IMG/VR virus record: IMGVR_UViG_3300005613_000001
Span: 372,001 to 436,000 of that record
DNA length: 64,000 nucleotides
Direction: 5' to 3' (one strand)
Shown: positions 29,128-39,413 of the stretch, in pieces
Numbering within the stretch: position 1 is the first letter of the stretch
Layout of the letters: each line of letters begins with the position of its first letter
The notes under the pieces: generated by a model
Told to the model about the DNA's origin: nothing
What the model saw: only the letters and a program-made list of their open reading frames with translations
Database searches by the model: none
Made by a program: the position numbers and the translations under genes

Positions 29128-29904
29128 ATGCCTAGAAAATTAAAAAATCTTATTGGACACACATTTGGCAAACTCACTGTTGTTAAATATGCTGGACTCA
29201 AACCAGCAGGTAAACAAAAACAATCGGCATGGTTATGCAAGTGTGAATGTGGAACCATTGTTGAAGTGCTAAATAATAATCTCAAAAAAGGCAATACTAA
29301 GTCTTGTGGATGTCATCATAAGAAGCGAGCCAAAGAAGCCAATCTTATAGATATATCAGGTAAAAAATACGGTCTGTTGCAAGCTCTAGAATATGTTGAA
29401 TCCCGAAATCGCAACGCCTATTGGAAATGTATTTGTGAGTGTGGCAAAGAAACCATAGTATCATCTTGTGGACTAAAAAGCGGCGGTGTAAAATCTTGCG
29501 GGTGTAGACAAGGTAATTTTATTCATGGAGAATGGTCAAAAGGAAGAGCAAATTATTCAAGATATAGAAGACAAGATCCGCTTGTAAGATTGAGACATAA
29601 TGTAAGTGCTGCTATTCGTGATTCCCTTAAATATAAATCAAATAAATCTATTTTTGATTATTTGCCCTATACATTTCAAGAATTAAAAGAACATTTAGAA
29701 TCACAATTTGAATCGTGGATGACGTGGGATAATTATGGCGGCAAGAGCAATGATGAGCGAAAAACCTGGCACATGGACCACATACAACCCCAATGTAAAT
29801 TTTCTTATCAATCACTTGACGACCCTCTAATGGTTGAATGCTGGGCATTATCCAACCTTCAACCATTAGAGAAAAAAACCAACTTTTCAAAAGGAGCTAA
29901 ATAA
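29128..29904 (+). CDS. HNH homing endonuclease
   Basis: two W.C.CECG..KSCGC repeats; WHMDHI..NLQPL...N. Confidence 0.9.
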   Translation: MPRKLKNLIGHTFGKLTVVKYAGLKPAGKQKQSAWLCKCECGTIVEVLNNNLKKGNTKSCGCHHKKRAKEANLIDISGKKYGLLQALEYVESRNRNAYWKCICECGKETIVSSCGLKSGGVKSCGCRQGNFIHGEWSKGRANYSRYRRQDPLVRLRHNVSAAIRDSLKYKSNKSIFDYLPYTFQELKEHLESQFESWMTWDNYGGKSNDERKTWHMDHIQPQCKFSYQSLDDPLMVECWALSNLQPLEKKTNFSKGAK

Positions 29905-30084: not shown

Positions 30085-30086
30085 AC

Positions 30087-30119
30087 AAAAAAGGCCCCTT
30101 TCTAACGAAAGGGGCCTTT
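30087..30119. terminator. bidirectional terminator closing the cas locus
   Basis: AAAAAAGGCCCCTTTC TAAC GAAAGGGGCCTTT. Confidence 0.88.
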
Positions 30120-30164: not shown

Positions 30165-30199
30165 GTTTCGACCCACACGGTCAGATAAATTCTGCCATG
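30165..30199 (-). CRISPR. solitary degenerate repeat overlapping the cas3 stop
   Basis: hairpin CATGG-CAGA/TCTG-A-CCGTG followed by TGGGTCGAAAC (repeat handle is TGGGTTGAAAC). Confidence 0.55.
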
Positions 30200-32388
30200 T
30201 AACCTAGAAAGTTAGGATCATAGGCACCCTTCCAAATGTAAAATCCATCTTCATTTTTTACAACAGGACACTTATCTTTCTTTTTCTCATATATCTGAAC
30301 GCTGTTTCTTGTAATCTCGTTTCGTGAAAGTGGATCATTCTTTAGAACGCTAGGATCAATAACTGCTGCAAATTTCAATGCGTTAATAACACGAAAATAC
30401 TCACCCACAGTTCTTAATTTCCCAGCATTCTCAGCCCGAACCAATTCTTCAATTGTGTACCCTTTGTCGTCGGGCTCTCTTTTTATCTTCTTTTCTTTTT
30501 CTGTTTCTAGTTGTAATTTGGCCGCTGCATCACACATTTCCGGGCCATAAGTCCCCTTTTTGTAAAAATCTCTGAATATCTTCGCAGGAATTTGGAATTC
30601 AGGATTTTCTGTAAATGGGTTGAAAGGATTAAAATTATCTTCATCTTGCTGTTCAAGTTCAAATATCTGAATAAAAGAATCTCTATAAAGACCTTCCCTG
30701 TTAATCCTTCCTTTGCACTGATGAGCATTATCTAGCCCTGCAATTTCTCTAAATCCATAACGGAATGAGAAATCAATTCCACACTCTACGCAAGATGTGG
30801 CTACAAGAATCCAATCATCATTCGGGCGATTTTTTAATTTCTTTATCACTCTATCCAATATTGCTTGTCTATCTTTGGGAGTAAGACAAGTTGATAGGTG
30901 TTCGACCTCTTTGCCTTGTTCATATAATGTTTTGGCAACTATAGCTGCATTTTTGATTGTATTAAATACAGCTAATTTTGGACCTTGAGGCTTAGAAATC
31001 ATTCTGCAAACACTTTGCAACGTATGCTTCCAAGGAGAATACCTTATTTCCACTCTCCCATTCTCTCTCTCAAGTGTTTTTTTGCTCAATTTAGGAGGAA
31101 TGATAGAGGGAACTTCAAAATCAAAACCACTTAATTCCTTAAAATAAGCATCCTCCCAAGGTCTAATTAGTGAACCTGAAGAAAAGAGCACTTTGCACCC
31201 TAGATTTTCAACAAGATATTTAAGCGACTTTAGTGCTAAAGGCCAAAAAATCAGAGGTATTGAAATGTGGGATTCATCAATAATGATAAAAGATCCTGCG
31301 AAGTTATGCAGTTTCCTTAATTTTCTTGTCCTACAAGCCAATAAAGATTCAAAAAACTGTACTGCTGTTGTGCAAACAATGGGACAGCTACATGTTGTTG
31401 CTAGAGCTTTTGCCCGAATACCCCTTCCTACGTCCTCATCATCTTCTACTTGATGATGATATTCGCCTACTGTTTCTGGTCCCTCATTTGGAAGTAACAA
31501 TTTGCGATATGTGTTCACACTTTGTGATATAATAGAGCAAAATGGAGCCACATAAATTATTTTCCTTGGATTCTGTTTAAGGGCATAAGCCATTAAAGCC
31601 GTAGTTTTCCCTGTTCCCACTTCGCTAGGACAACAAACAACGGGAGCCTCAACAGGAGAATTTCTACAAGCCCCATATACCGATGCCCTTATTCTATTTC
31701 TATCGTTATTTTCACTTTCTTTTTGCAAATTGTGAATGTAAGTATCTAATATTTTAAGTCGTTTCTCGGCATCTAGTTCTAACTCCGATTCAATTACAAA
31801 ATTGCCATAATGTTGGGCTGTATCATGCCAATCTGCGTCTACCAAGCATGATAAAGCAATTCTCATTAAATTGGGTGAAAGTTTATTGGGCGAATCTCCT
31901 TGTATGTCTTTTATTGTCTTGCTATGCTTTTCAACTAGCGATGGCAACATTTCATCAAAATAATCGCAAACCATACCATCATAATCAACCCAAGGGGTTC
32001 TATCTCTAACTAAATTCTCATCTCTATAATCCACACCTGTTGGTGAGTAATCACAATAACCTCTATGGTGCGACACTACCATCCATGCTGCTGGTAAATG
32101 TTTTTCGGAGATAAGATGGGCCGTGCCCGCATCAACATGATTGGGCATCTTGCCATTTTTTTCTCCCCTTAGCACTATTTGGTTGTGTTTTCCAAGTTTG
32201 CCCAAATCATGCCATCTCGCGGCTTTTAAGACAATTAATGACAATGCCTCAAAGTCACTTTTGTTTAAATGCGGGCGTATTTTCTCTAAATTATATTCAC
32301 ATTTACGACAAACCCCTTCAATGTGAGAGGGGTATGTTTGAACCGGAATCCCACGCTCTATGTCTGCTGAATGTGCTAGGTATTCCAT
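30181..32388 (-). CDS. cas3: Cas3 HD nuclease-helicase
   Basis: AHS, WHDLGK, SHH, LVDADW; GTGKTT, IIDESH, GIDFS, Q..GRINREG. Confidence 0.95.
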   Translation of the reverse strand: MEYLAHSADIERGIPVQTYPSHIEGVCRKCEYNLEKIRPHLNKSDFEALSLIVLKAARWHDLGKLGKHNQIVLRGEKNGKMPNHVDAGTAHLISEKHLPAAWMVVSHHRGYCDYSPTGVDYRDENLVRDRTPWVDYDGMVCDYFDEMLPSLVEKHSKTIKDIQGDSPNKLSPNLMRIALSCLVDADWHDTAQHYGNFVIESELELDAEKRLKILDTYIHNLQKESENNDRNRIRASVYGACRNSPVEAPVVCCPSEVGTGKTTALMAYALKQNPRKIIYVAPFCSIISQSVNTYRKLLLPNEGPETVGEYHHQVEDDEDVGRGIRAKALATTCSCPIVCTTAVQFFESLLACRTRKLRKLHNFAGSFIIIDESHISIPLIFWPLALKSLKYLVENLGCKVLFSSGSLIRPWEDAYFKELSGFDFEVPSIIPPKLSKKTLERENGRVEIRYSPWKHTLQSVCRMISKPQGPKLAVFNTIKNAAIVAKTLYEQGKEVEHLSTCLTPKDRQAILDRVIKKLKNRPNDDWILVATSCVECGIDFSFRYGFREIAGLDNAHQCKGRINREGLYRDSFIQIFELEQQDEDNFNPFNPFTENPEFQIPAKIFRDFYKKGTYGPEMCDAAAKLQLETEKEKKIKREPDDKGYTIEELVRAENAGKLRTVGEYFRVINALKFAAVIDPSVLKNDPLSRNEITRNSVQIYEKKKDKCPVVKNEDGFYIWKGAYDPNFLGYMAEFI

Positions 32389-32406
32389 TTTTTGTCCACG
32401 TATAAT

Positions 32407-33587
32407 ATTTCAACCCACGCCATATCAAATGACGAACGCCTCTTGTTATTATCCGCCGCCTCCTCGCCAGTTTCAACCCACGCCATATTAAATGACGAAC
32501 TTGAGCAGGGAAGTGGCTTCCTTTGGTGAATGTTTCAACCCACGCCATATTAAATGACGACTTTCCCGTAGCACGCCGAAAGGATAGTATGGGTTTCAAC
32601 CCACGCCATATTAAATGACGACTTCTCCTGTTTCGGTTTCCTTGGCATTCCGCAGTTTCAACCCACGCCATATCAAATGACGATTGTAAGTAAGCTCCCG
32701 CGAATTATTCTCATCGTTTCAACCCACGCCATATCAATGACGATTGTTAGACGCAATCATTTTGTCGGTGAGTAGCCGCCGTTCGTCGTTTCAACCCACG
32801 CCATATCAAATGACGATTGTTACGTCGCAGAAAGCCTAACGGGATGTGGCTAACGTGTTTCAACCCACGCCATATCAAATGACGATTGTTAGACCCTCAT
32901 TCACGGGAGACTCTATAGTGCATCGTTTCAACCCACGCCATATCAAATGACGATTGTAAGTTGGAATAGATGCAGTCGCAGTCGTCGTTTCAACCCACGC
33001 CAAATGACGGTCGCTTATGTCCTGCTGGGTGTATCCACAATTGTTTCAACCCACGCCATATCAAATGACGATTGTTAGGTAAATGCTACTGGACAGGACG
33101 GATCTATGTCTATGACGGGTTTCAACCCACGCCAAATGACGATTGTTAGTCGGCAGCAATTTCCACCGCCTCCCATTTTGAGTTTCCGTTTCAACCCACG
33201 CCATATCAAATGACGATTGTTAGTACGGGGAATACACCACTTGTGTAGGTGTAAGCGTCGTTTCAACCCACGCCATATCAAATGACGATTGTTAGGATCG
33301 TATGAACAGGGACAAGAGCCAATCCCGCCTCGTTTCAACCCACGCCATATCAAATGACGATTGTTAGCCCCTCTAGCGTCTTTTACTTTGTGCTTTTGTC
33401 CGGTCAGTTTCAACCCACGCCATATCAAATGACGATTGTTAGCCGCCTCAAATACGCATCATTCAAGCCAGAGGTAACAGTTTCAACCCACGCCATATCA
33501 AATGACGATTGTTAGAAAATCTAATGCAAGCTCGCCACCACTCCCAAACGTGTTTCAACCCACGCCATATCAAATGACGATTGTTAG
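32407..33587 (-). CRISPR. type I-C CRISPR array, 18 repeats / 17 spacers
   Basis: consensus CTAACAATCGTCATTTGATATGGCGTGGGTTGAAAC (36 nt), stem CGTCAT/ATGGCG plus 11-nt tail; degenerates toward cas3. Confidence 0.98.
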
Positions 33588-33752
33588 GGCTTATGATTTA
33601 AGTCCTTAACACTAAAAGACTTATGAAGGTGTTTTCGAGAGGTATCAAAAACCACTTTCATTTTTGAGCTTCTTTTTAATTGTTTATCAATTTGCATCAC
33701 CGTAAGTGGTTCTCATTGAGCCACTTACGGTGATGCGAGTGGTGCGGGAGGT
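33588..33752 (-). promoter_or_regulatory. CRISPR leader
   Basis: adjacent to the best-conserved repeats; two TAAGT-N15-ACTTA inverted repeats; 16-bp perfect stem at 33694-33736. Confidence 0.8.
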
Positions 33753-34643
33753 TTATTTAGCACGGAACCCTTCGAATTGGTTCAAATCCTCCACTGGGAA
33801 ATCAAAATCTGGTTGTGAGAACGTGTAATCCTCCAAGGAGTGAGATGCCATAGTAGGATCATCCCCTATCCTCACGGGAGTTAAAGATTCCCAGAATTTT
33901 CGTTCATCAAAACTGCCCAGTGGATTTGTGTGGTCAGCCCACCAAGTATGAAGGACATTCAGTGACCCAGGCGGGCGAGAAGTTGATGTGGAGGATGTAA
34001 AGATGTGCTTCAAAACATGTTTGAATACTTCTACGTCCTCTTGCGTAGTAAAGGTCCGCGTGGCAAGATTCGGATTAACCGAAATTCTTGATACATACAC
34101 TCCATGTGTAATGTATTTCTTGGCTCGGGGAGCCAAATCCGATTCTTCTTGCCGCAATGGGAACCTCTTAGACAATGTGCCGCCATCAAGTTTATTTACT
34201 TTTGCCACCGAAATGGCATTTGATAGCACAACAGGCCCAGTAGCAATAAAGTCAAATTCCTTTTCTTCTTTCTTGCCTTGGATTGCTGTTGTTCCGAATA
34301 GTCTAACATCCCAATACCAATTACAAAAGGCTTCAATGTCCTCACTCAGTTTGGAAGCTAATTTTTTGGCTTCAACACCATCTGAAGCATCTTTAAACCC
34401 TCGCAGCATAGATTCAAAGACATGAAATCTATCGGGATTAATTTCCAATCTTTCTTGCAAATACTGAAAGACCGGCGATTTATGATCTACAAATAAATCC
34501 CGCAGTTTTCTTTTCAGAGAACAATCACTGGCCCAACCATAACCATCAGAGGTTACTCGGGGTTCCCCTTCCCAATCGGGATCGCCATTGGGGTTTCCAA
34601 GGTTACATTCAAAGACGAGCAGACCTGAACTTCTTTTAATCAT
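33753..34643 (-). CDS. cas7: Cas7 (Csd2), type I-C
   Basis: GNPNGDPD...PR, SLKRKLRD, WDVRLFG, TGPV. Confidence 0.95.
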   Translation of the reverse strand: MIKRSSGLLVFECNLGNPNGDPDWEGEPRVTSDGYGWASDCSLKRKLRDLFVDHKSPVFQYLQERLEINPDRFHVFESMLRGFKDASDGVEAKKLASKLSEDIEAFCNWYWDVRLFGTTAIQGKKEEKEFDFIATGPVVLSNAISVAKVNKLDGGTLSKRFPLRQEESDLAPRAKKYITHGVYVSRISVNPNLATRTFTTQEDVEVFKHVLKHIFTSSTSTSRPPGSLNVLHTWWADHTNPLGSFDERKFWESLTPVRIGDDPTMASHSLEDYTFSQPDFDFPVEDLNQFEGFRAK

Positions 34644-34644
34644 G

Positions 34645-35031
34645 TTACTCTCCGTTTTCTTGGGGTTTTCTGTATGAGTATCCGGCTGCTAAAAGCAATG
34701 ATGCTTGGTGTGACAAGCTAGTAGGAAGTTGCCCGTGGGCCGCTTCTGTCATTCTTGACAATAACTCTTCATAGATTCTTACTGAGAAGTAGCAATTATC
34801 ACTTTCCTTTCTTTTGTAGTTTTTCGCCCAATCCAAATACACATTAAAATTTCTTACGAAACTATCCATTCCGCTATCTGGATTGGATCGAATTCCATAA
34901 AGGCTTTTTCCGCCAATCAATGTGGAGGGCACACTTGCCCCACGGCACATGAAAAACGCTCGGTGTATAGCACTCGCCTCTGTAAGAAGCCTCCCTAAAA
35001 GAAATGCCCAATGATTTTCGTAATCTTCCAT
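34645..35031 (-). CDS. cas11: Cas11 small subunit from internal in-frame start within cas8c
   Basis: AAGAAAGG-N7-ATG before MEDYENHWAFLLGRLL; 128 aa; internal translation is established for I-C. Confidence 0.65.
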   Translation of the reverse strand: MEDYENHWAFLLGRLLTEASAIHRAFFMCRGASVPSTLIGGKSLYGIRSNPDSGMDSFVRNFNVYLDWAKNYKRKESDNCYFSVRIYEELLSRMTEAAHGQLPTSLSHQASLLLAAGYSYRKPQENGE

Positions 35032-36453
35032 TTTCAAGCCTTTCTTGTACAAGATTAAATGACCTAGAGGTAAAAGATGCCTTAATAAGTAAGGCGCGTT
35101 TTTGTAATTACATCTAAAGACCATAGGAGCTACATGGGTTGCATAGTGTCTTTCAAATTTAGCAATTGCAGCCGGTTCATTAAAGAACAAATCATGCGCA
35201 TCCCAAATGTTGAAGCCATAAGATTTAACACTTGTAAATTTATCCTCTGCTCCATTGTAATTCCAAGTGCAATTACAAGCATCTACTACATTTCGGAGAT
35301 TTGGGTAGGCAACCTGGAAAATACTTCTGCCGTTTTGTATTCCGGCTTTCCATTCATTGACCCCATTTAATATCTCTTCTGAAGTGGCTGATTTAGAATA
35401 AACAACCCTTCCCACTTTCTTCTGTCCCACTAATTCTAAAACGACAATCCGGCCTACAACATCTCGTTTCTTTTGTTCCCTCATCATTTTTATAAGAGAT
35501 GCTGCCGATTCTTGCCAATCTTCTAAGGTAACCTCACTTTTTGATTCTAATGTTGTTTGATTAGGGAGTATGCTGCTCAGCACCCAATGGGATTTCATCA
35601 CTTTGCCATCTATATTTGTAACGGAGACGCTGTACCAAAGCCCTCCAACTTCCCTTTTATTTTTCTTATCATAATAAGCTTGATGCTCTGGAGATAGAAT
35701 GAAGTCAATCGCCCTTTCGATTTTCCTTCGAGAAGTAATTCCCAAAACGCAGCTTTGAGTGGAATTTAATCCAAAACGCTCAAAACATTGGTTTTTTTCA
35801 AATTTTGAAAAATATTGAATTTGAATATTGCCGGGCTTAACTTCAAAACCCTTTTTATCACTTCCGAAATTAGAATTGCCTAGAATATCTTTTTTCTCAT
35901 CATCTGCTTGCGGACTTTCTAATTGCCCATCTTCTAATTCAAATAATCGTTGACTAATCTTGCGAAGACAAGTAAAGCTTTGAACAGGGCACGGATAGTC
36001 AGAAGGTTTATCTACTTCTAACGCCACATGGAGAGGCTTGTCTTGGTAATATTCTGATAGTTGTTCTATGAAAGCATTTACATCAATCTTTTCTAAATGC
36101 TCTGCCAATTGTTTAAGTGCTAACAATTCCTCTGAACCATCAAAAACTTCTTTGCTGATTTCTATTGTTGTTTGTATTCTTGCTTTAATTCTCTCTAGCT
36201 TTTTCTCCTCATCTTCATCTTTCTTAGGACCAAAAGACAGCCCTATTGCTTTGTTGCTTTTTTTGTAGAATCTAAGATTTCGCCAAGCGTCAAAATCATT
36301 AATTTCTACAATTCCCTTTGGGCCAATGCGAACTTCAATGGCCTTTTGATTGGGATTGGATTTTAATTCACGGTGCCACTGTTCTCCGTCCTGCTCGGGC
36401 GAGATGCCCCAAGATTCTAAACTATCACAAAAAGAGAGCAATTCGTTCAACAT
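34645..36453 (-). CDS. cas8c: Cas8c large subunit (divergent)
   Basis: position between cas5 and cas7; MLNEL start, WHRELK, C-terminal AFLLGRLL..GY. Confidence 0.8.
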   Translation of the reverse strand: MLNELLSFCDSLESWGISPEQDGEQWHRELKSNPNQKAIEVRIGPKGIVEINDFDAWRNLRFYKKSNKAIGLSFGPKKDEDEEKKLERIKARIQTTIEISKEVFDGSEELLALKQLAEHLEKIDVNAFIEQLSEYYQDKPLHVALEVDKPSDYPCPVQSFTCLRKISQRLFELEDGQLESPQADDEKKDILGNSNFGSDKKGFEVKPGNIQIQYFSKFEKNQCFERFGLNSTQSCVLGITSRRKIERAIDFILSPEHQAYYDKKNKREVGGLWYSVSVTNIDGKVMKSHWVLSSILPNQTTLESKSEVTLEDWQESAASLIKMMREQKKRDVVGRIVVLELVGQKKVGRVVYSKSATSEEILNGVNEWKAGIQNGRSIFQVAYPNLRNVVDACNCTWNYNGAEDKFTSVKSYGFNIWDAHDLFFNEPAAIAKFERHYATHVAPMVFRCNYKNAPYLLRHLLPLGHLILYKKGLKMEDYENHWAFLLGRLLTEASAIHRAFFMCRGASVPSTLIGGKSLYGIRSNPDSGMDSFVRNFNVYLDWAKNYKRKESDNCYFSVRIYEELLSRMTEAAHGQLPTSLSHQASLLLAAGYSYRKPQENGE

Positions 36454-37154
36454 AGCTTACTCCATTCAACGTCAAGTTTTTGTTGAATTTTCTGATCCTG
36501 AAAAACTAAAATACCATCCCTCAAGGTCACTTCTTGATCTGTTAATCTTAAAACACCCGCCTCAATTTTTACATTTCTAGCTGTCACCACATCAACGCAT
36601 CCACCGGGTTTATCATCATCAAAGACAGACATAACCATAGTGGGAACATCAAAAGAGCAATCATTGATTTTGGTAATTGGTTTCCCCAAATATGTTGCCA
36701 TAAATTCTTTTCTACCCAAGGAAACAGGGTGGTAGGATTGTCCCCGCTTCAATCTTCTAAAGAATTGATTTTGGAAGGAATGGGCGCAATTAACATTTTG
36801 ATATTTGGCGGGGGATGGTTTGGAGTTTGTATTAAGTGCTAGAGCTAGAATTTGGAATCGCGGCCTAAGCAATACGGATTCATGGAGTTGTAAAGCATTG
36901 TCTTTTTCTATTTGATCTTTGAGGCGGAATGGGCTACGCGAATTATACGTATAGTGCGTATATTGAGGTTTTGCACATACTCCAATTGCTACTATTTCTA
37001 GTTTGACCCCCTTTATTCTACAGCATGATTCAATCATGCCTATACAAGCGGAAGGAGGAGGGAGGGGATAGCTAGCACTTTCACTACCTGTACACGGATC
37101 AGCAAACATCCCGAAGTCGCCAGCGATTTCAAAGCCGATAGGATAAGCAATCAT
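36447..37154 (-). CDS. cas5: Cas5 (Cas5d, crRNA-processing)
   Basis: FEIAGDFGMF.DP..SYP.PPPSA..GMIES, SLGRKEF. Confidence 0.92.
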   Translation of the reverse strand: MIAYPIGFEIAGDFGMFADPCTGSESASYPLPPPSACIGMIESCCRIKGVKLEIVAIGVCAKPQYTHYTYNSRSPFRLKDQIEKDNALQLHESVLLRPRFQILALALNTNSKPSPAKYQNVNCAHSFQNQFFRRLKRGQSYHPVSLGRKEFMATYLGKPITKINDCSFDVPTMVMSVFDDDKPGGCVDVVTARNVKIEAGVLRLTDQEVTLRDGILVFQDQKIQQKLDVEWSKLC

Positions 37155-37181
37155 CTTAAGTTCCTTTTATCCATTGAAAGT

Positions 37182-37415
37182 GTTTCAACCCACGTCATGT
37201 TAATGACGAATCCGCATGCTGCCGTCTGCCACTCGCATGACCTTCTTTCTTTCAACCCACGCCATACTAATGGCGATTGTTAATCTGAGCGACGATTGCT
37301 TGTAAGCCACAGCGCATGAGTTTCAATCCACGCCATATCAAATGACGATTGTTAGTCGCATATCACCCCTGTTGGTGGAGCCGCTGTTTTAACCCACGCC
37401 ATATCAAATGACGAT
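37182..37415 (-). CRISPR. mini-array, 4 divergent repeats / 3 spacers, upstream of cas5
   Basis: repeats at 37182, 37249, 37320, 37386; stems retained through stem-preserving substitutions. Confidence 0.92.
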
Positions 37416-37489: not shown

Positions 37490-37517
37490 ATAATAGCATA
37501 GGTCCATTGAAAGTAAA
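37490..37517 (-). promoter_or_regulatory. predicted promoter of mini-array/cas operon
   Basis: TTTACT-N16-(TG)TATTAT, same architecture as the promoters at 7280-7307 and 38912-38939. Confidence 0.65.
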
Positions 37518-38996: not shown

Positions 38997-39413
38997 ATGA
39001 TTTGTGAGGCTTGTGGAGAAAAATGCCAAGAAAAATGGTGTCTATCTTGTACTTTTGGGGGGTTCATACCCAAAGAAGTTGACTACTCGCCCTTCAAACC
39101 AATTCTATCGCGTGCAAAGCAACGGAAGAAAAAAATTGACCTGACGCTGAGCGATCTTTACAATCAATGGCAAAAACAAAAGGGGCGGTGTCCGTATACT
39201 GGTTGGAAACTAAAGCTGCCCGCTGGCCGGAATGAAAAACTGCCCAAAACCCCAGATCGCGCCAGCTTAGATCGTATTGATAGTTCAGGCGGTTACACAC
39301 CCGATAACATACAATATGTTTCTCTTGCTATTCAATACGCAAAACACAACTGGTCACAATTTGAAGTGAAGAAAATGCTTTTAGATGCAACAAAGCATCT
39401 GCATTTGATTTAG
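38997..39413 (+). CDS. HNH-like endonuclease
   Basis: Q.GRCPYTG, SLDRIDSSGGY..DNIQ. Confidence 0.8.
   Translation: MICEACGEKCQEKWCLSCTFGGFIPKEVDYSPFKPILSRAKQRKKKIDLTLSDLYNQWQKQKGRCPYTGWKLKLPAGRNEKLPKTPDRASLDRIDSSGGYTPDNIQYVSLAIQYAKHNWSQFEVKKMLLDATKHLHLI

What the first reader, a model, noticed from the sequence alone, without database searches (positions are those of the whole stretch)
30181..37415. Phage-encoded type I-C interference module with repeats placed at the head of each cas transcript block
Seen: cas5/8c/11/7 and cas3 are present, with no cas1/2/4 in the window. The main array separates cas7 from cas3. The cas3 ATG is 18 nt and the cas5 ATG 27 nt after a terminal repeat. Cas3 keeps HD and helicase motifs with variants (SEVGTGKT, DESH, SGS for SAT). 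Spacers are visibly more GC-rich than the phage. Established: large phages carry adaptation-less CRISPR systems aimed at competitors or host genes. Inference: cas3 translation is coupled to array processing, and targets are host or other mobile elements.
Basis: partly seen in the sequence, partly recalled or inferred. Interest (0 to 1): 0.6.

Follow-up and report, generated by a model that had tools for sequence, protein, structure and literature searches.

The report
Self-regulating CRISPR system in huge phage
A 527-kb phage carries a CRISPR type I-C attack module that cannot acquire new spacers, and it re-uses its own CRISPR repeats as control elements in front of its cas genes, including a short guide that matches the promoter of the operon it sits in.

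Summary
On the minus strand lie a 4-repeat mini-array, cas5, cas8c and cas7, then an 18-repeat array, then cas3. The cas5 ATG is 27 nt and the cas3 ATG 18 nt after a terminal repeat. Cas3 motifs are intact. Spacers are 52% GC against 41% for the genome. Cas1, Cas2, Cas4 and Cas6 are absent from the whole 527-kb virus record.

New findings:
- The 12 nt right after the terminal mini-array repeat are an exact copy of 12 nt at the -35 box of the promoter-like site upstream of the mini-array, next to TTT. This is the anatomy of a CreR/crlRNA autorepression guide.
- Two related phage loci (Cas7 40-45% identical) also hold a 14-nt seed match between a guide and their cas5 promoter, next to TTA or TTT. 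Shuffles reached these matches in 1/500, 0/500 and 0/300 trials.
- In one relative, cas3 again abuts an array, and its start codon lies inside the degenerate terminal repeat.
- Promoter, solo repeat, ribosome site and ATG modules also head other genes in both phages.

Coupling of cas3 to array transcription is strongly implied. Coupling of its translation to processing is untested. Spacer targets remain unknown. This is a new variant of known kinds.

The parts
30085..30113 (-). intrinsic-terminator-like hairpin plus T run after cas3
   Evidence: stem 30113->30095, then CCTTTTTTGT
30165..30179 (-). degenerate repeat-handle remnant (CGTGTGGGTCGAAAC), starting 2 nt after the cas3 stop codon
   Evidence: 12 of its last 13 nt match the repeat's 3' end; no guide target found
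30181..32388 (-). cas3 (735 aa), HD nuclease plus SF2 helicase, motifs intact
32407..32434 (-). terminal repeat R22: intact hairpin, handle ends GAAAT, 18 nt before the cas3 ATG
32448..32476 (-). promoter-like site TTGAAA-17-GATAAT, built from the R21 handle and spacer S21
   Evidence: 10 of 12 matches; by analogy with the promoter-in-spacer module of L005; function unproven
32407..33588 (-). main CRISPR array: 18 repeats, 17 spacers. The four cas3-proximal repeats lack the TAACAAT extension; two repeats have a 5-nt loop deletion
33589..33693 (-). AT-rich leader of the main array
   Evidence: the promoter could not be placed with confidence
33694..33736 (-). perfect 16-bp hairpin after the cas7 stop, with no U tract
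   Evidence: read directly; not listed as a terminator
33753..34643 (-). cas7 (Csd2-like, 296 aa)
34645..36453 (-). cas8c (602 aa), divergent
   Evidence: PADLOC Cas8c 3.5e-39; no Pfam or PDB sequence match
34645..35031 (-). candidate internal cas11 reading frame (128 aa from M475 of cas8c)
   Evidence: inferred from the known internal start in type I-C cas8c (recalled from memory)
36447..37154 (-). cas5 (Cas5c-like, 235 aa), the presumed pre-crRNA endonuclease
37170..37181 (-). 12-nt guide seed (ACTTTCAATGGA): the first bases after terminal repeat R4 and the start of the cas5 5' UTR
37182..37413 (-). mini-array: 4 divergent repeats (R1-R4) and 3 spacers. R3 and R4 carry changes that turn the stem's G-U pair into G-C or A-U
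37490..37517 (-). promoter-like site TTTACT-16-TATTAT (TG before the -10 box) upstream of the mini-array
37503..37517 (-). predicted target of the guide: a 12-nt exact copy (37514->37503) preceded by TTT (37517->37515), overlapping the -35 box

Best explanation
This is a working type I-C interference system, without adaptation genes, of a huge phage. Its CRISPR repeats also serve as control elements at the 5' ends of the cas messages.

1. A promoter at about 37517-37490 transcribes the mini-array together with cas5-cas8c(cas11)-cas7.
2. Cas5c cuts each repeat at the 3' base of its hairpin. This releases three crRNAs and leaves the cas message starting with the 11-nt crRNA handle.
3. That handle plus the next 12 nt forms a CreR-like guide. 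Cascade loaded on it binds the -35 region of its own promoter (12-bp seed, TTT as PAM) and represses the operon. The match is too short to license Cas3, so nothing is cut.
4. cas3 has no room for a promoter after the array. It is therefore made as the 3' part of the array transcript, or from a promoter inside the last spacer, and always behind repeat R22. Cas3 output is thus tied to crRNA output.

Shown: the anatomy, the seed matches and their conservation.
Inferred: cleavage by Cas5c, repression, and the direction of any effect on cas3.
For: - All four cas genes are intact, and Cas3 motifs are kept.
- The Cas5 profile hits solved type I-C pre-crRNA endonucleases at 2e-14, and an invariant His aligns with the His of the K-H pair in D. 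vulgaris Cas5c.
- The repeat has the type I-C layout, a hairpin followed by the 11-nt handle TGGGTTGAAAC, as in many bacterial type I-C arrays.
- Repeat variants R3, R4 and the orphan repeat keep the stem.
- The gaps of 27 nt and 18 nt leave no room for a promoter.
- The 12-mer after R4 occurs exactly twice in 64 kb against 0 expected. The second copy lies at the -35 box, next to TTT.
- One uniform test was run on the 200 nt upstream of the cas5 operon in three lineages. The best seed runs were 12, 14 and 14 nt, with mismatches only at positions 6 and 12, and PAMs TTT, TTA and TTT. Shuffles reached these in 1/500, 0/500 and 0/300 trials.
- In relative L005/L006, cas5-8-7, leader, array and cas3 follow in that order. 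The cas3 ATG (10495) sits inside the degenerate terminal repeat, and the conserved LAHSAD motif starts at the first base after it.
- CreR autorepression is experimentally established for types I-B, I-E and V-A, and creA-like elements are predicted for type I-C (bioRxiv 10.1101/2023.03.10.532045; PMC10120712).
Against: - No transcript or protein data exist: no sequencing run was listed.
- The guide has a repeat only on its 5' side and runs on into the cas5 message, whereas CreR/CreA have two flanking pseudo-repeats.
- The PAMs are TTT/TTA, not the canonical type I-C TTC (PMC7913775).
- The promoter is only a consensus match, and promoter-like sites in this region are not more frequent than in shuffles.
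- In the window, the 12-nt copy could be a scar of the event that inserted the mini-array.
- The mini-array before cas5 is absent from the relatives. They keep the guide-promoter match but place the guide elsewhere.
- No guide matching a cas3 or leader promoter was found.
Confidence: 0.55

Rival explanations
1. One reading: cleavage of the terminal repeat by Cas5c is what makes the cas3 (and cas5) message translatable or stable, so Cas3 is only made once the array is being processed.
For: - cas3 must be transcribed through R22.
- The processed 5' UTRs are unstructured.
- Engineered Csy4 sites in 5' UTRs are known to standardise expression (recalled from memory, not checked).
- The array-to-cas3 fusion is conserved in L005.
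Against: - Folding of the unprocessed region shows no structure that hides the ribosome site or AUG (z = -0.09).
- In L005 the cas3 start codon lies inside the terminal repeat, upstream of the expected cut. Cleavage there would destroy the reading frame, and that repeat's stem is broken.
Confidence: 0.25
2. RNA-level repression in cis. After cleavage, Cas5c stays on the handle and Cas7 polymerises over the next 30-35 nt. In every case this stretch holds the ribosome site and AUG, so Cascade proteins shut off translation of repeat-led messages (cas5, cas3, the orphan small ORF, and the L005 repeat-led genes).
For: - All start codons lie 0-30 nt after a handle, inside the footprint of a crRNA guide: window 18, 27 and 21 nt; L005 22, 0-2 and 30 nt.
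- Solo-repeat RNAs are known to bind Cas6f plus 8-9 Cas7f (PMC10651486).
Against: There is no direct evidence. The range of distances could simply reflect compact phage intergenic regions. Cas7 coating of a long mRNA has not been described.
Confidence: 0.25
3. No regulatory meaning. Arrays and cas genes were shuffled by recombination between repeats in a compact genome, and the 12-nt duplicate is a junction scar.
For: - cas genes are embedded among arrays in both phages. L005 has duplicated leaders on either side of cas3, and the window has a handle remnant after cas3.
- HNH endonuclease genes flank the locus.
Against: - Seed matches to the cas5 promoter occur in three lineages with different layouts. 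All start at guide position 1, all lie next to TTW, and mismatches fall only at positions 6 and 12.
- A scar would not explain L005 or L001, where guide and target are 4-8 kb apart.
Confidence: 0.1
4. A decaying, non-functional remnant: with no adaptation genes, the repeats are degenerating and spacer lengths are irregular.
For: - Spacer lengths range from 26 to 41 nt, and there are several repeat variants.
- The L001 array has about 58 progressively degenerate repeats.
Against: - All four ORFs are intact and their motifs are kept.
- Repeat variants preserve the hairpin.
- The second assembly of the phage (L172) is 100% identical over 7 kb.
Confidence: 0.08

Closest known systems
Type I-C (Dvulg) CRISPR-Cas interference module (D. 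vulgaris, B. halodurans, N. lactamica, P. aeruginosa)
   Same: It has Cas3 (HD plus helicase), Cas5c as the processing enzyme with no Cas6, Cas8c and Cas7. The repeat is a hairpin followed by an 11-nt handle ending GTTGAAAC.
   Different: - The gene order is mini-array, cas5-8-7, array, cas3, instead of cas3-cas5-cas8-cas7-cas4-cas1-cas2-array.
- There is no adaptation module.
- The proteins score below NCBIfam's curated cut-offs.
- The repeat stem is AT-rich, and most copies carry an 8-nt 5' extension.
Variant type I-C systems of huge phages (Al-Shayeb et al. 2020, PMC7162821)
   Same: It is phage-borne, lacks Cas1, Cas2 and Cas4, and has a Cas5d-like processing protein with altered proposed active-site residues.
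   Different: The systems described there have another helicase in place of Cas3. This one has a bona fide Cas3. The text passages retrieved from that paper do not mention repeat-led cas messages or promoter-matching guides.
CreR / crlRNA mini-arrays (Cas-regulating RNAs; bioRxiv 10.1101/2023.03.10.532045; PMC10120712)
   Same: A degenerate mini-CRISPR lies next to the effector operon. Its guide has only a PAM-proximal match of 12-14 nt to the core promoter of the cas operon.
   Different: - The guide follows a terminal repeat and has no 3' pseudo-repeat.
- In the window it is the 5' UTR of the regulated message itself.
- The PAM is TTT/TTA rather than TTC.
- The host of the circuit is a phage, and nothing has been shown experimentally.
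Solitary repeat units / RNA anti-CRISPRs (Racr; PMC10651486) and viral crlRNAs (bioRxiv 10.1101/2024.10.29.618823)
   Same: A promoter is followed directly by a solo repeat in a viral genome. This applies to the orphan at genome 321503-321532 and to the two units in L005.
   Different: Here the solo repeats match the phage's own cas system. They are followed within 0-22 nt by a ribosome site and a protein-coding ORF. No target promoter was found for them.
CreTA (Cascade-repressed toxin-antitoxin RNA pair)
   Same: A Cascade-dependent element lies next to a small, possibly toxic gene. The orphan repeat precedes a 24-aa hydrophobic ORF and a terminator.
   Different: CreA represses the creT promoter on DNA. 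Here the repeat lies inside the candidate toxin's own message, no promoter match exists, and toxicity is untested.

Membership tests
Type I-C CRISPR-Cas | Cas3 with an HD nuclease domain and SF2 helicase motifs | tested here: met
   PADLOC Cas3c 2.9e-90; cas3_HD and cas3_core; alignment to 8g9u_P and 8zns_A; motifs read in the translation
Type I-C CRISPR-Cas | Cas5c, Cas8c and Cas7 (Csd2) effector genes, with no Cas6 | tested here: met
   no Cas6 match in the genome. Scores fall below NCBIfam's curated cut-offs, so these are divergent members
Type I-C CRISPR-Cas | Repeat with a hairpin and an 11-nt 5' handle of the (A/G)TTGAAAC type | tested here: met
Type I-C CRISPR-Cas | Adaptation genes cas4-cas1-cas2 and the canonical order cas3-cas5-cas8-cas7 | tested here: not met
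   no Cas1, Cas2 or Cas4 in the 527-kb genome; the order is cas5-8-7, array, cas3. It is therefore an interference-only variant
Type I-C CRISPR-Cas | Cas11 made from an internal start in cas8c | tested here: inconclusive
   a candidate ATG at 35031 with an SD-like AAGAAAGG, giving 128 aa; no homology test was possible
Type I-C CRISPR-Cas | Cas5c catalytic residues (the Y/K/H triad of B. halodurans Cas5d, recalled from memory) | tested here: inconclusive
   an invariant His (H125) aligns with the His of the K-H pair in D. vulgaris Cas5c, but the Lys is Ala
CreR / crlRNA autoregulatory mini-array | Degenerate repeat(s) next to the effector operon | tested here: met
   mini-array R1-R4, each repeat different, 27 nt before cas5
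CreR / crlRNA autoregulatory mini-array | Guide with partial, PAM-proximal complementarity to the cas operon promoter | tested here: met
   12-nt seed at the -35 box; 14-nt seeds in L005 and L001; shuffles reached these in 1/500, 0/500 and 0/300 trials
CreR / crlRNA autoregulatory mini-array | Canonical PAM beside the target | tested here: inconclusive
   TTT, TTA and TTT against the canonical TTC; this clade's own PAM is unknown
CreR / crlRNA autoregulatory mini-array | Guide flanked by two pseudo-repeats | tested here: not met
   in the window and in L001 the guide follows the last repeat. It is followed by cas5 in the window and by a terminator hairpin in L001. In L005 it is flanked by two repeats
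CreR / crlRNA autoregulatory mini-array | Cascade-dependent repression of the promoter | not testable with these tools
   needs a reporter assay
Racr / solitary repeat unit | Solo repeat directly downstream of a promoter in a viral genome, away from cas genes | tested here: met
   the orphan at genome 321503-321532: TTGAAA-17-TATAAT, 83 kb from the cas locus
Racr / solitary repeat unit | Mimics the host's repeat and inhibits the host's CRISPR-Cas | not testable with these tools
   the host is unknown, and the repeat matches the phage's own system

The most novel reading that the evidence does not exclude
The phage runs a small regulon of repeat-tagged messages. CRISPR repeats placed between a strong promoter and the ribosome site act as 5' UTR operators. 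The phage's own Cas5c and Cascade proteins read these operators on RNA, and so time or guard protein-coding genes. These genes include cas3, the cas5 operon, a 24-aa hydrophobic peptide unit in this phage, and two genes in the 138-kb relative. In that reading CRISPR-Cas acts as a post-transcriptional regulator of ordinary genes, on top of the DNA-level CreR-like loop.
Probability: 0.2. Interest if true: 0.8.

Novelty: new variant of a known kind. Interest (0 to 1): 0.62.

Why it matters
- It would extend CreR-type autoregulation to a CRISPR-Cas system owned by a virus. It would also show a minimal form of it: one repeat plus the operon's own 5' UTR as the guide.
- It predicts the PAM (TTT/TTA) of a divergent phage type I-C clade without any known target.
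- It points to a possible use of CRISPR repeats as 5' UTR control elements on protein-coding messages.
- The locus is compact (four genes, 7 kb) and could be tested directly in E. coli.

Tried and rejected
- **Spacer targets.** blastn-short of all 20 spacers against the phage genome found nothing above chance. The main array against GenBank phages and PLSDB plasmids gave no match. Spacers S5, S9, S16, S2 and S3 against IMG/VR gave none. S8 against JGI metagenomes found only the phage itself (L172, 100% identical). There is no cross-targeting between this phage and L005.
- **Merged patterns.** Merging two spacers into one degenerate pattern was considered. It was not sent, because such patterns hold fewer than the 14 specified bases the tool asks for.
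- **Sequencing runs.** None was listed.
- **Host inference.** Searching bacterial genomes for the handle failed because it occurs in many phyla.
- **Other arrays or solo repeats.** The rest of the genome holds only the one orphan. Other periodic repeats are coding repeats. No other IMG/VR contig has this repeat.
- **RNA switch.** Folding gave no support for a structure switch at the cas3 or cas5 heads.
- **Other promoter-matching guides.** None was found for cas3, the handle remnant after cas3, the orphan, or the L005 solo repeats.
- **Baseline.** A first baseline for the distance from array to next gene was spoiled by spurious ORFs in GC-rich genomes. It was replaced by a stricter one.
- **Closest single-protein search.** A search of viral contigs with Cas7 alone found nothing. 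An alignment was needed.
- **Not used.** The large protein search, structure prediction and complex prediction were not needed. No alternative genetic code was used.

Full report
**Setting.** The window is bases 372001-436000 of a 527,112-bp virus record that CheckV rates 100% complete. The record has a terminase match just outside the window and a tRNA cluster. HNH endonuclease genes lie on both sides of the cas locus. A JGI metagenome contig, L172, is 100% identical over 7 kb.

**Observation.** On the minus strand lie:
- cas3, 30181-32388;
- an 18-repeat array, 32407-33588;
- cas7, 33753-34643;
- cas8c, 34645-36453;
- cas5, 36447-37154;
- a 4-repeat mini-array, 37182-37413.

Family scans assign all four proteins to type I-C, though below NCBIfam's curated cut-offs. 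Cas3 has the HD motifs and the helicase motifs SEVGTGKT, DESH and SGS. It aligns to solved type I-C Cas3 at about 1e-32. cas11 is not a separate gene. An internal start in cas8c (ATG 35031, 128 aa) is a candidate. The cas3 ATG is 18 nt and the cas5 ATG 27 nt after a terminal repeat. Spacer GC is 0.52 against 0.41 for the genome. Cas1, Cas2, Cas4 and Cas6 are absent from the whole genome.

**The repeats.** The core is a 6-bp hairpin (CGTCAT, loop, ATGGCG) followed by the 11-nt handle TGGGTTGAAAC. This is the layout of bacterial type I-C repeats. Most copies carry a conserved TAACAAT extension on the 5' side. The four copies next to cas3 lack it.
- Mini-array repeats R3 and R4 change the stem's G-U pair to G-C and A-U.
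- R4 has a perfect stem and a canonical handle.
- Spacer lengths are irregular (26-41 nt), as expected without Cas4, Cas1 and Cas2.

**Is the placement chance?** Among 52 bacterial arrays with the same handle, at most 10% have a long co-oriented ORF starting within 30 nt of the last repeat. Those few are in very GC-rich genomes. Here both arrays do.

**Relatives.** Cas7 has few close relatives; the best is 45% identical.
- L002 has the canonical order cas3-cas5-cas8-cas7. L003 has cas8-cas7-cas3 with no array between them.
- L001 has cas5-8-7 followed by about 58 degenerate repeats and then a terminator.
- L005/L006 are two IMG/VR phage records, one of them 137,762 bp and complete. They have Cas7 at 40% and Cas3 at 41% identity and no Cas1. 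Their order is cas5-8-7, leader, a 9-repeat array, then cas3.
  - The only in-frame start codons for that cas3 (ATG 10495, GTG 10507) lie inside the degenerate terminal repeat.
  - The conserved LAHSAD motif begins at the first base after that repeat.
  - A second array with a duplicated leader follows cas3.

So the fusion of array to cas3 occurs in two phage lineages.

**A guide aimed at its own promoter.** I asked whether any spacer, or the sequence after a terminal repeat, has a seed match near the cas promoters.
- In the window, the 12 nt right after R4 (37181-37170) are identical to 37514-37503, which are preceded by TTT. This copy overlaps the -35 box of the promoter-like site TTTACT-16-TATTAT upstream of the mini-array. 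The 12-mer occurs exactly twice in the window against 0 expected.
- In L005, an odd 39-nt spacer, flanked by a repeat with compensatory stem changes, matches the -10 box and 5' UTR of the cas5 promoter in 13 of 14 positions. The one mismatch is at position 6, and the PAM is TTA.
- In L001, the sequence after the last repeat matches the -35 box of the cas5 promoter. Mismatches fall only at positions 6 and 12, and the PAM is TTT. A terminator hairpin follows the guide.
- A uniform shuffle test on the 200 nt upstream of each operon gave 1/500, 0/500 and 0/300.

Partial, PAM-proximal matches of guides to cas promoters define CreR/crlRNA autorepression. That mechanism is shown for types I-B, I-E, I-F and V-A, and creA-like elements are predicted for type I-C. 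The canonical type I-C PAM is TTC. This clade may use TTT/TTA.

**Solo repeats before other genes.** Outside the window, at genome 321503-321532 (L004:7504-7533, minus), a near-consensus promoter (TTGAAA-17-TATAAT) is followed by these elements:
- a solo repeat with a shortened stem;
- 21 nt holding AAGGAAG;
- a 24-aa hydrophobic ORF;
- a strong terminator.

L005 has two such modules on the strand opposite cas5. Each has TTGACA-17-TATAAT, then 9 nt, then a repeat, and then an ATG after 22 nt or after 0-2 nt. One of them sits behind a further degenerate repeat, so that its promoter occupies the place of a spacer. The window shows the same design at R21, S21 (TTGAAA-17-GATAAT) and R22, followed by cas3. 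By my own arithmetic, a given spacer would supply such a -10 box by chance about 1% of the time. No promoter-matching seed was found for these solo repeats. Their products match no PHROG family.

**Mechanism.** The model I favour is this. The cas5 operon is transcribed behind the mini-array. Cas5c cleavage leaves the message with a crRNA handle, and the handle plus 12-nt seed guides Cascade back to the promoter for autorepression without cleavage. cas3 is expressed only as an extension of array transcription, always behind R22.

Whether the repeat raises or lowers cas3 translation is open.
- Folding gives no sign of a switch.
- All start codons lie within 30 nt of a handle, inside a crRNA-guide footprint. 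This would fit occlusion by Cas5 and Cas7, as seen for solo-repeat RNAs that bind Cas6f and Cas7f.

**Targets.** There is no self-target. No hit was found in any collection tried. The higher GC of the spacers points to a source outside the phage, but host and targets remain unknown.

**Limits.** No RNA data could be obtained, since no run was listed. All promoters are consensus matches. The catalytic competence of Cas5 is inferred.

**Verdict.** It is a divergent, interference-only type I-C system of a huge phage, which is a known kind. What appears to be new is the combination: a CreR-like guide built from the operon's own 5' UTR, cas3 fused to an array, and repeat-led coding genes.

Noticed in passing
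L004:7350-7545 (genome 321350-321545, minus strand; outside the window): Compact unit: promoter TTGAAA-17-TATAAT, a solo CRISPR repeat, a ribosome site, a 24-aa hydrophobic ORF (MGIFSSSLSFLFLSLYLSDRWRCA) and a strong terminator. Two tRNA-Phe genes follow directly. It is a possible small toxin or membrane peptide under Cas control.
   Followed up: partly
L004:800-7200: The phage carries a cluster of nine tRNA genes (3 Leu, 2 Ser, 2 Tyr, 2 Phe), all on the minus strand, near the orphan repeat.
   Followed up: no
window 29128-29904 (+) and 38997-39413 (+): HNH or homing-type endonuclease genes (phrog_374 at 7.5e-36; phrog_3322 at 2.3e-19) lie on both sides of the cas locus, which hints that the locus is a mobile island.
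   Followed up: no
window 33694-33736: A perfect 16-bp hairpin lies right after the cas7 stop codon, with no U tract on either strand. It could be a processing or stabilising element, or a terminator that needs no U tract.
   Followed up: no
window 30165-30179: A remnant of a repeat handle starts 2 nt after the cas3 stop codon. It suggests that cas3 was once flanked by arrays on both sides, as it is in L005.
   Followed up: partly
L005:4590-4830 (minus strand): A degenerate repeat is followed by a consensus promoter in the place of a spacer, then a repeat, then a 125-aa ORF with an N-terminal membrane helix. About 95 nt into that ORF lies a second repeat hairpin without a handle.
   Followed up: partly
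L005:7345-7358 (minus strand): The same L005 regulatory spacer has a second 12-of-12 seed match inside cas8, next to GGA rather than TTW. Its meaning is unknown.
   Followed up: no
L001:6500-10610: About 58 repeats become progressively more degenerate along a 4-kb array, with no cas3 on the part of the contig that was read.
   Followed up: partly
L007:8440-8970: Another viral type I-C-like locus has a roughly 9-repeat array with spacers of very uneven length. It ends 58 nt before a cas7-like gene on the same strand.
   Followed up: no
genome 242480-242570 (minus strand; outside the window): The motif ATACAGGGAG occurs three times around a TATAAT box before a gene. It is not CRISPR-related and may be an operator.
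   Followed up: no
genome 450400-450800 and 309540-309760 (outside the window): Collagen-like (Gly-X-Y) and lysine-rich tandem coding repeats. They look like arrays in a k-mer scan but are not CRISPR.
   Followed up: yes
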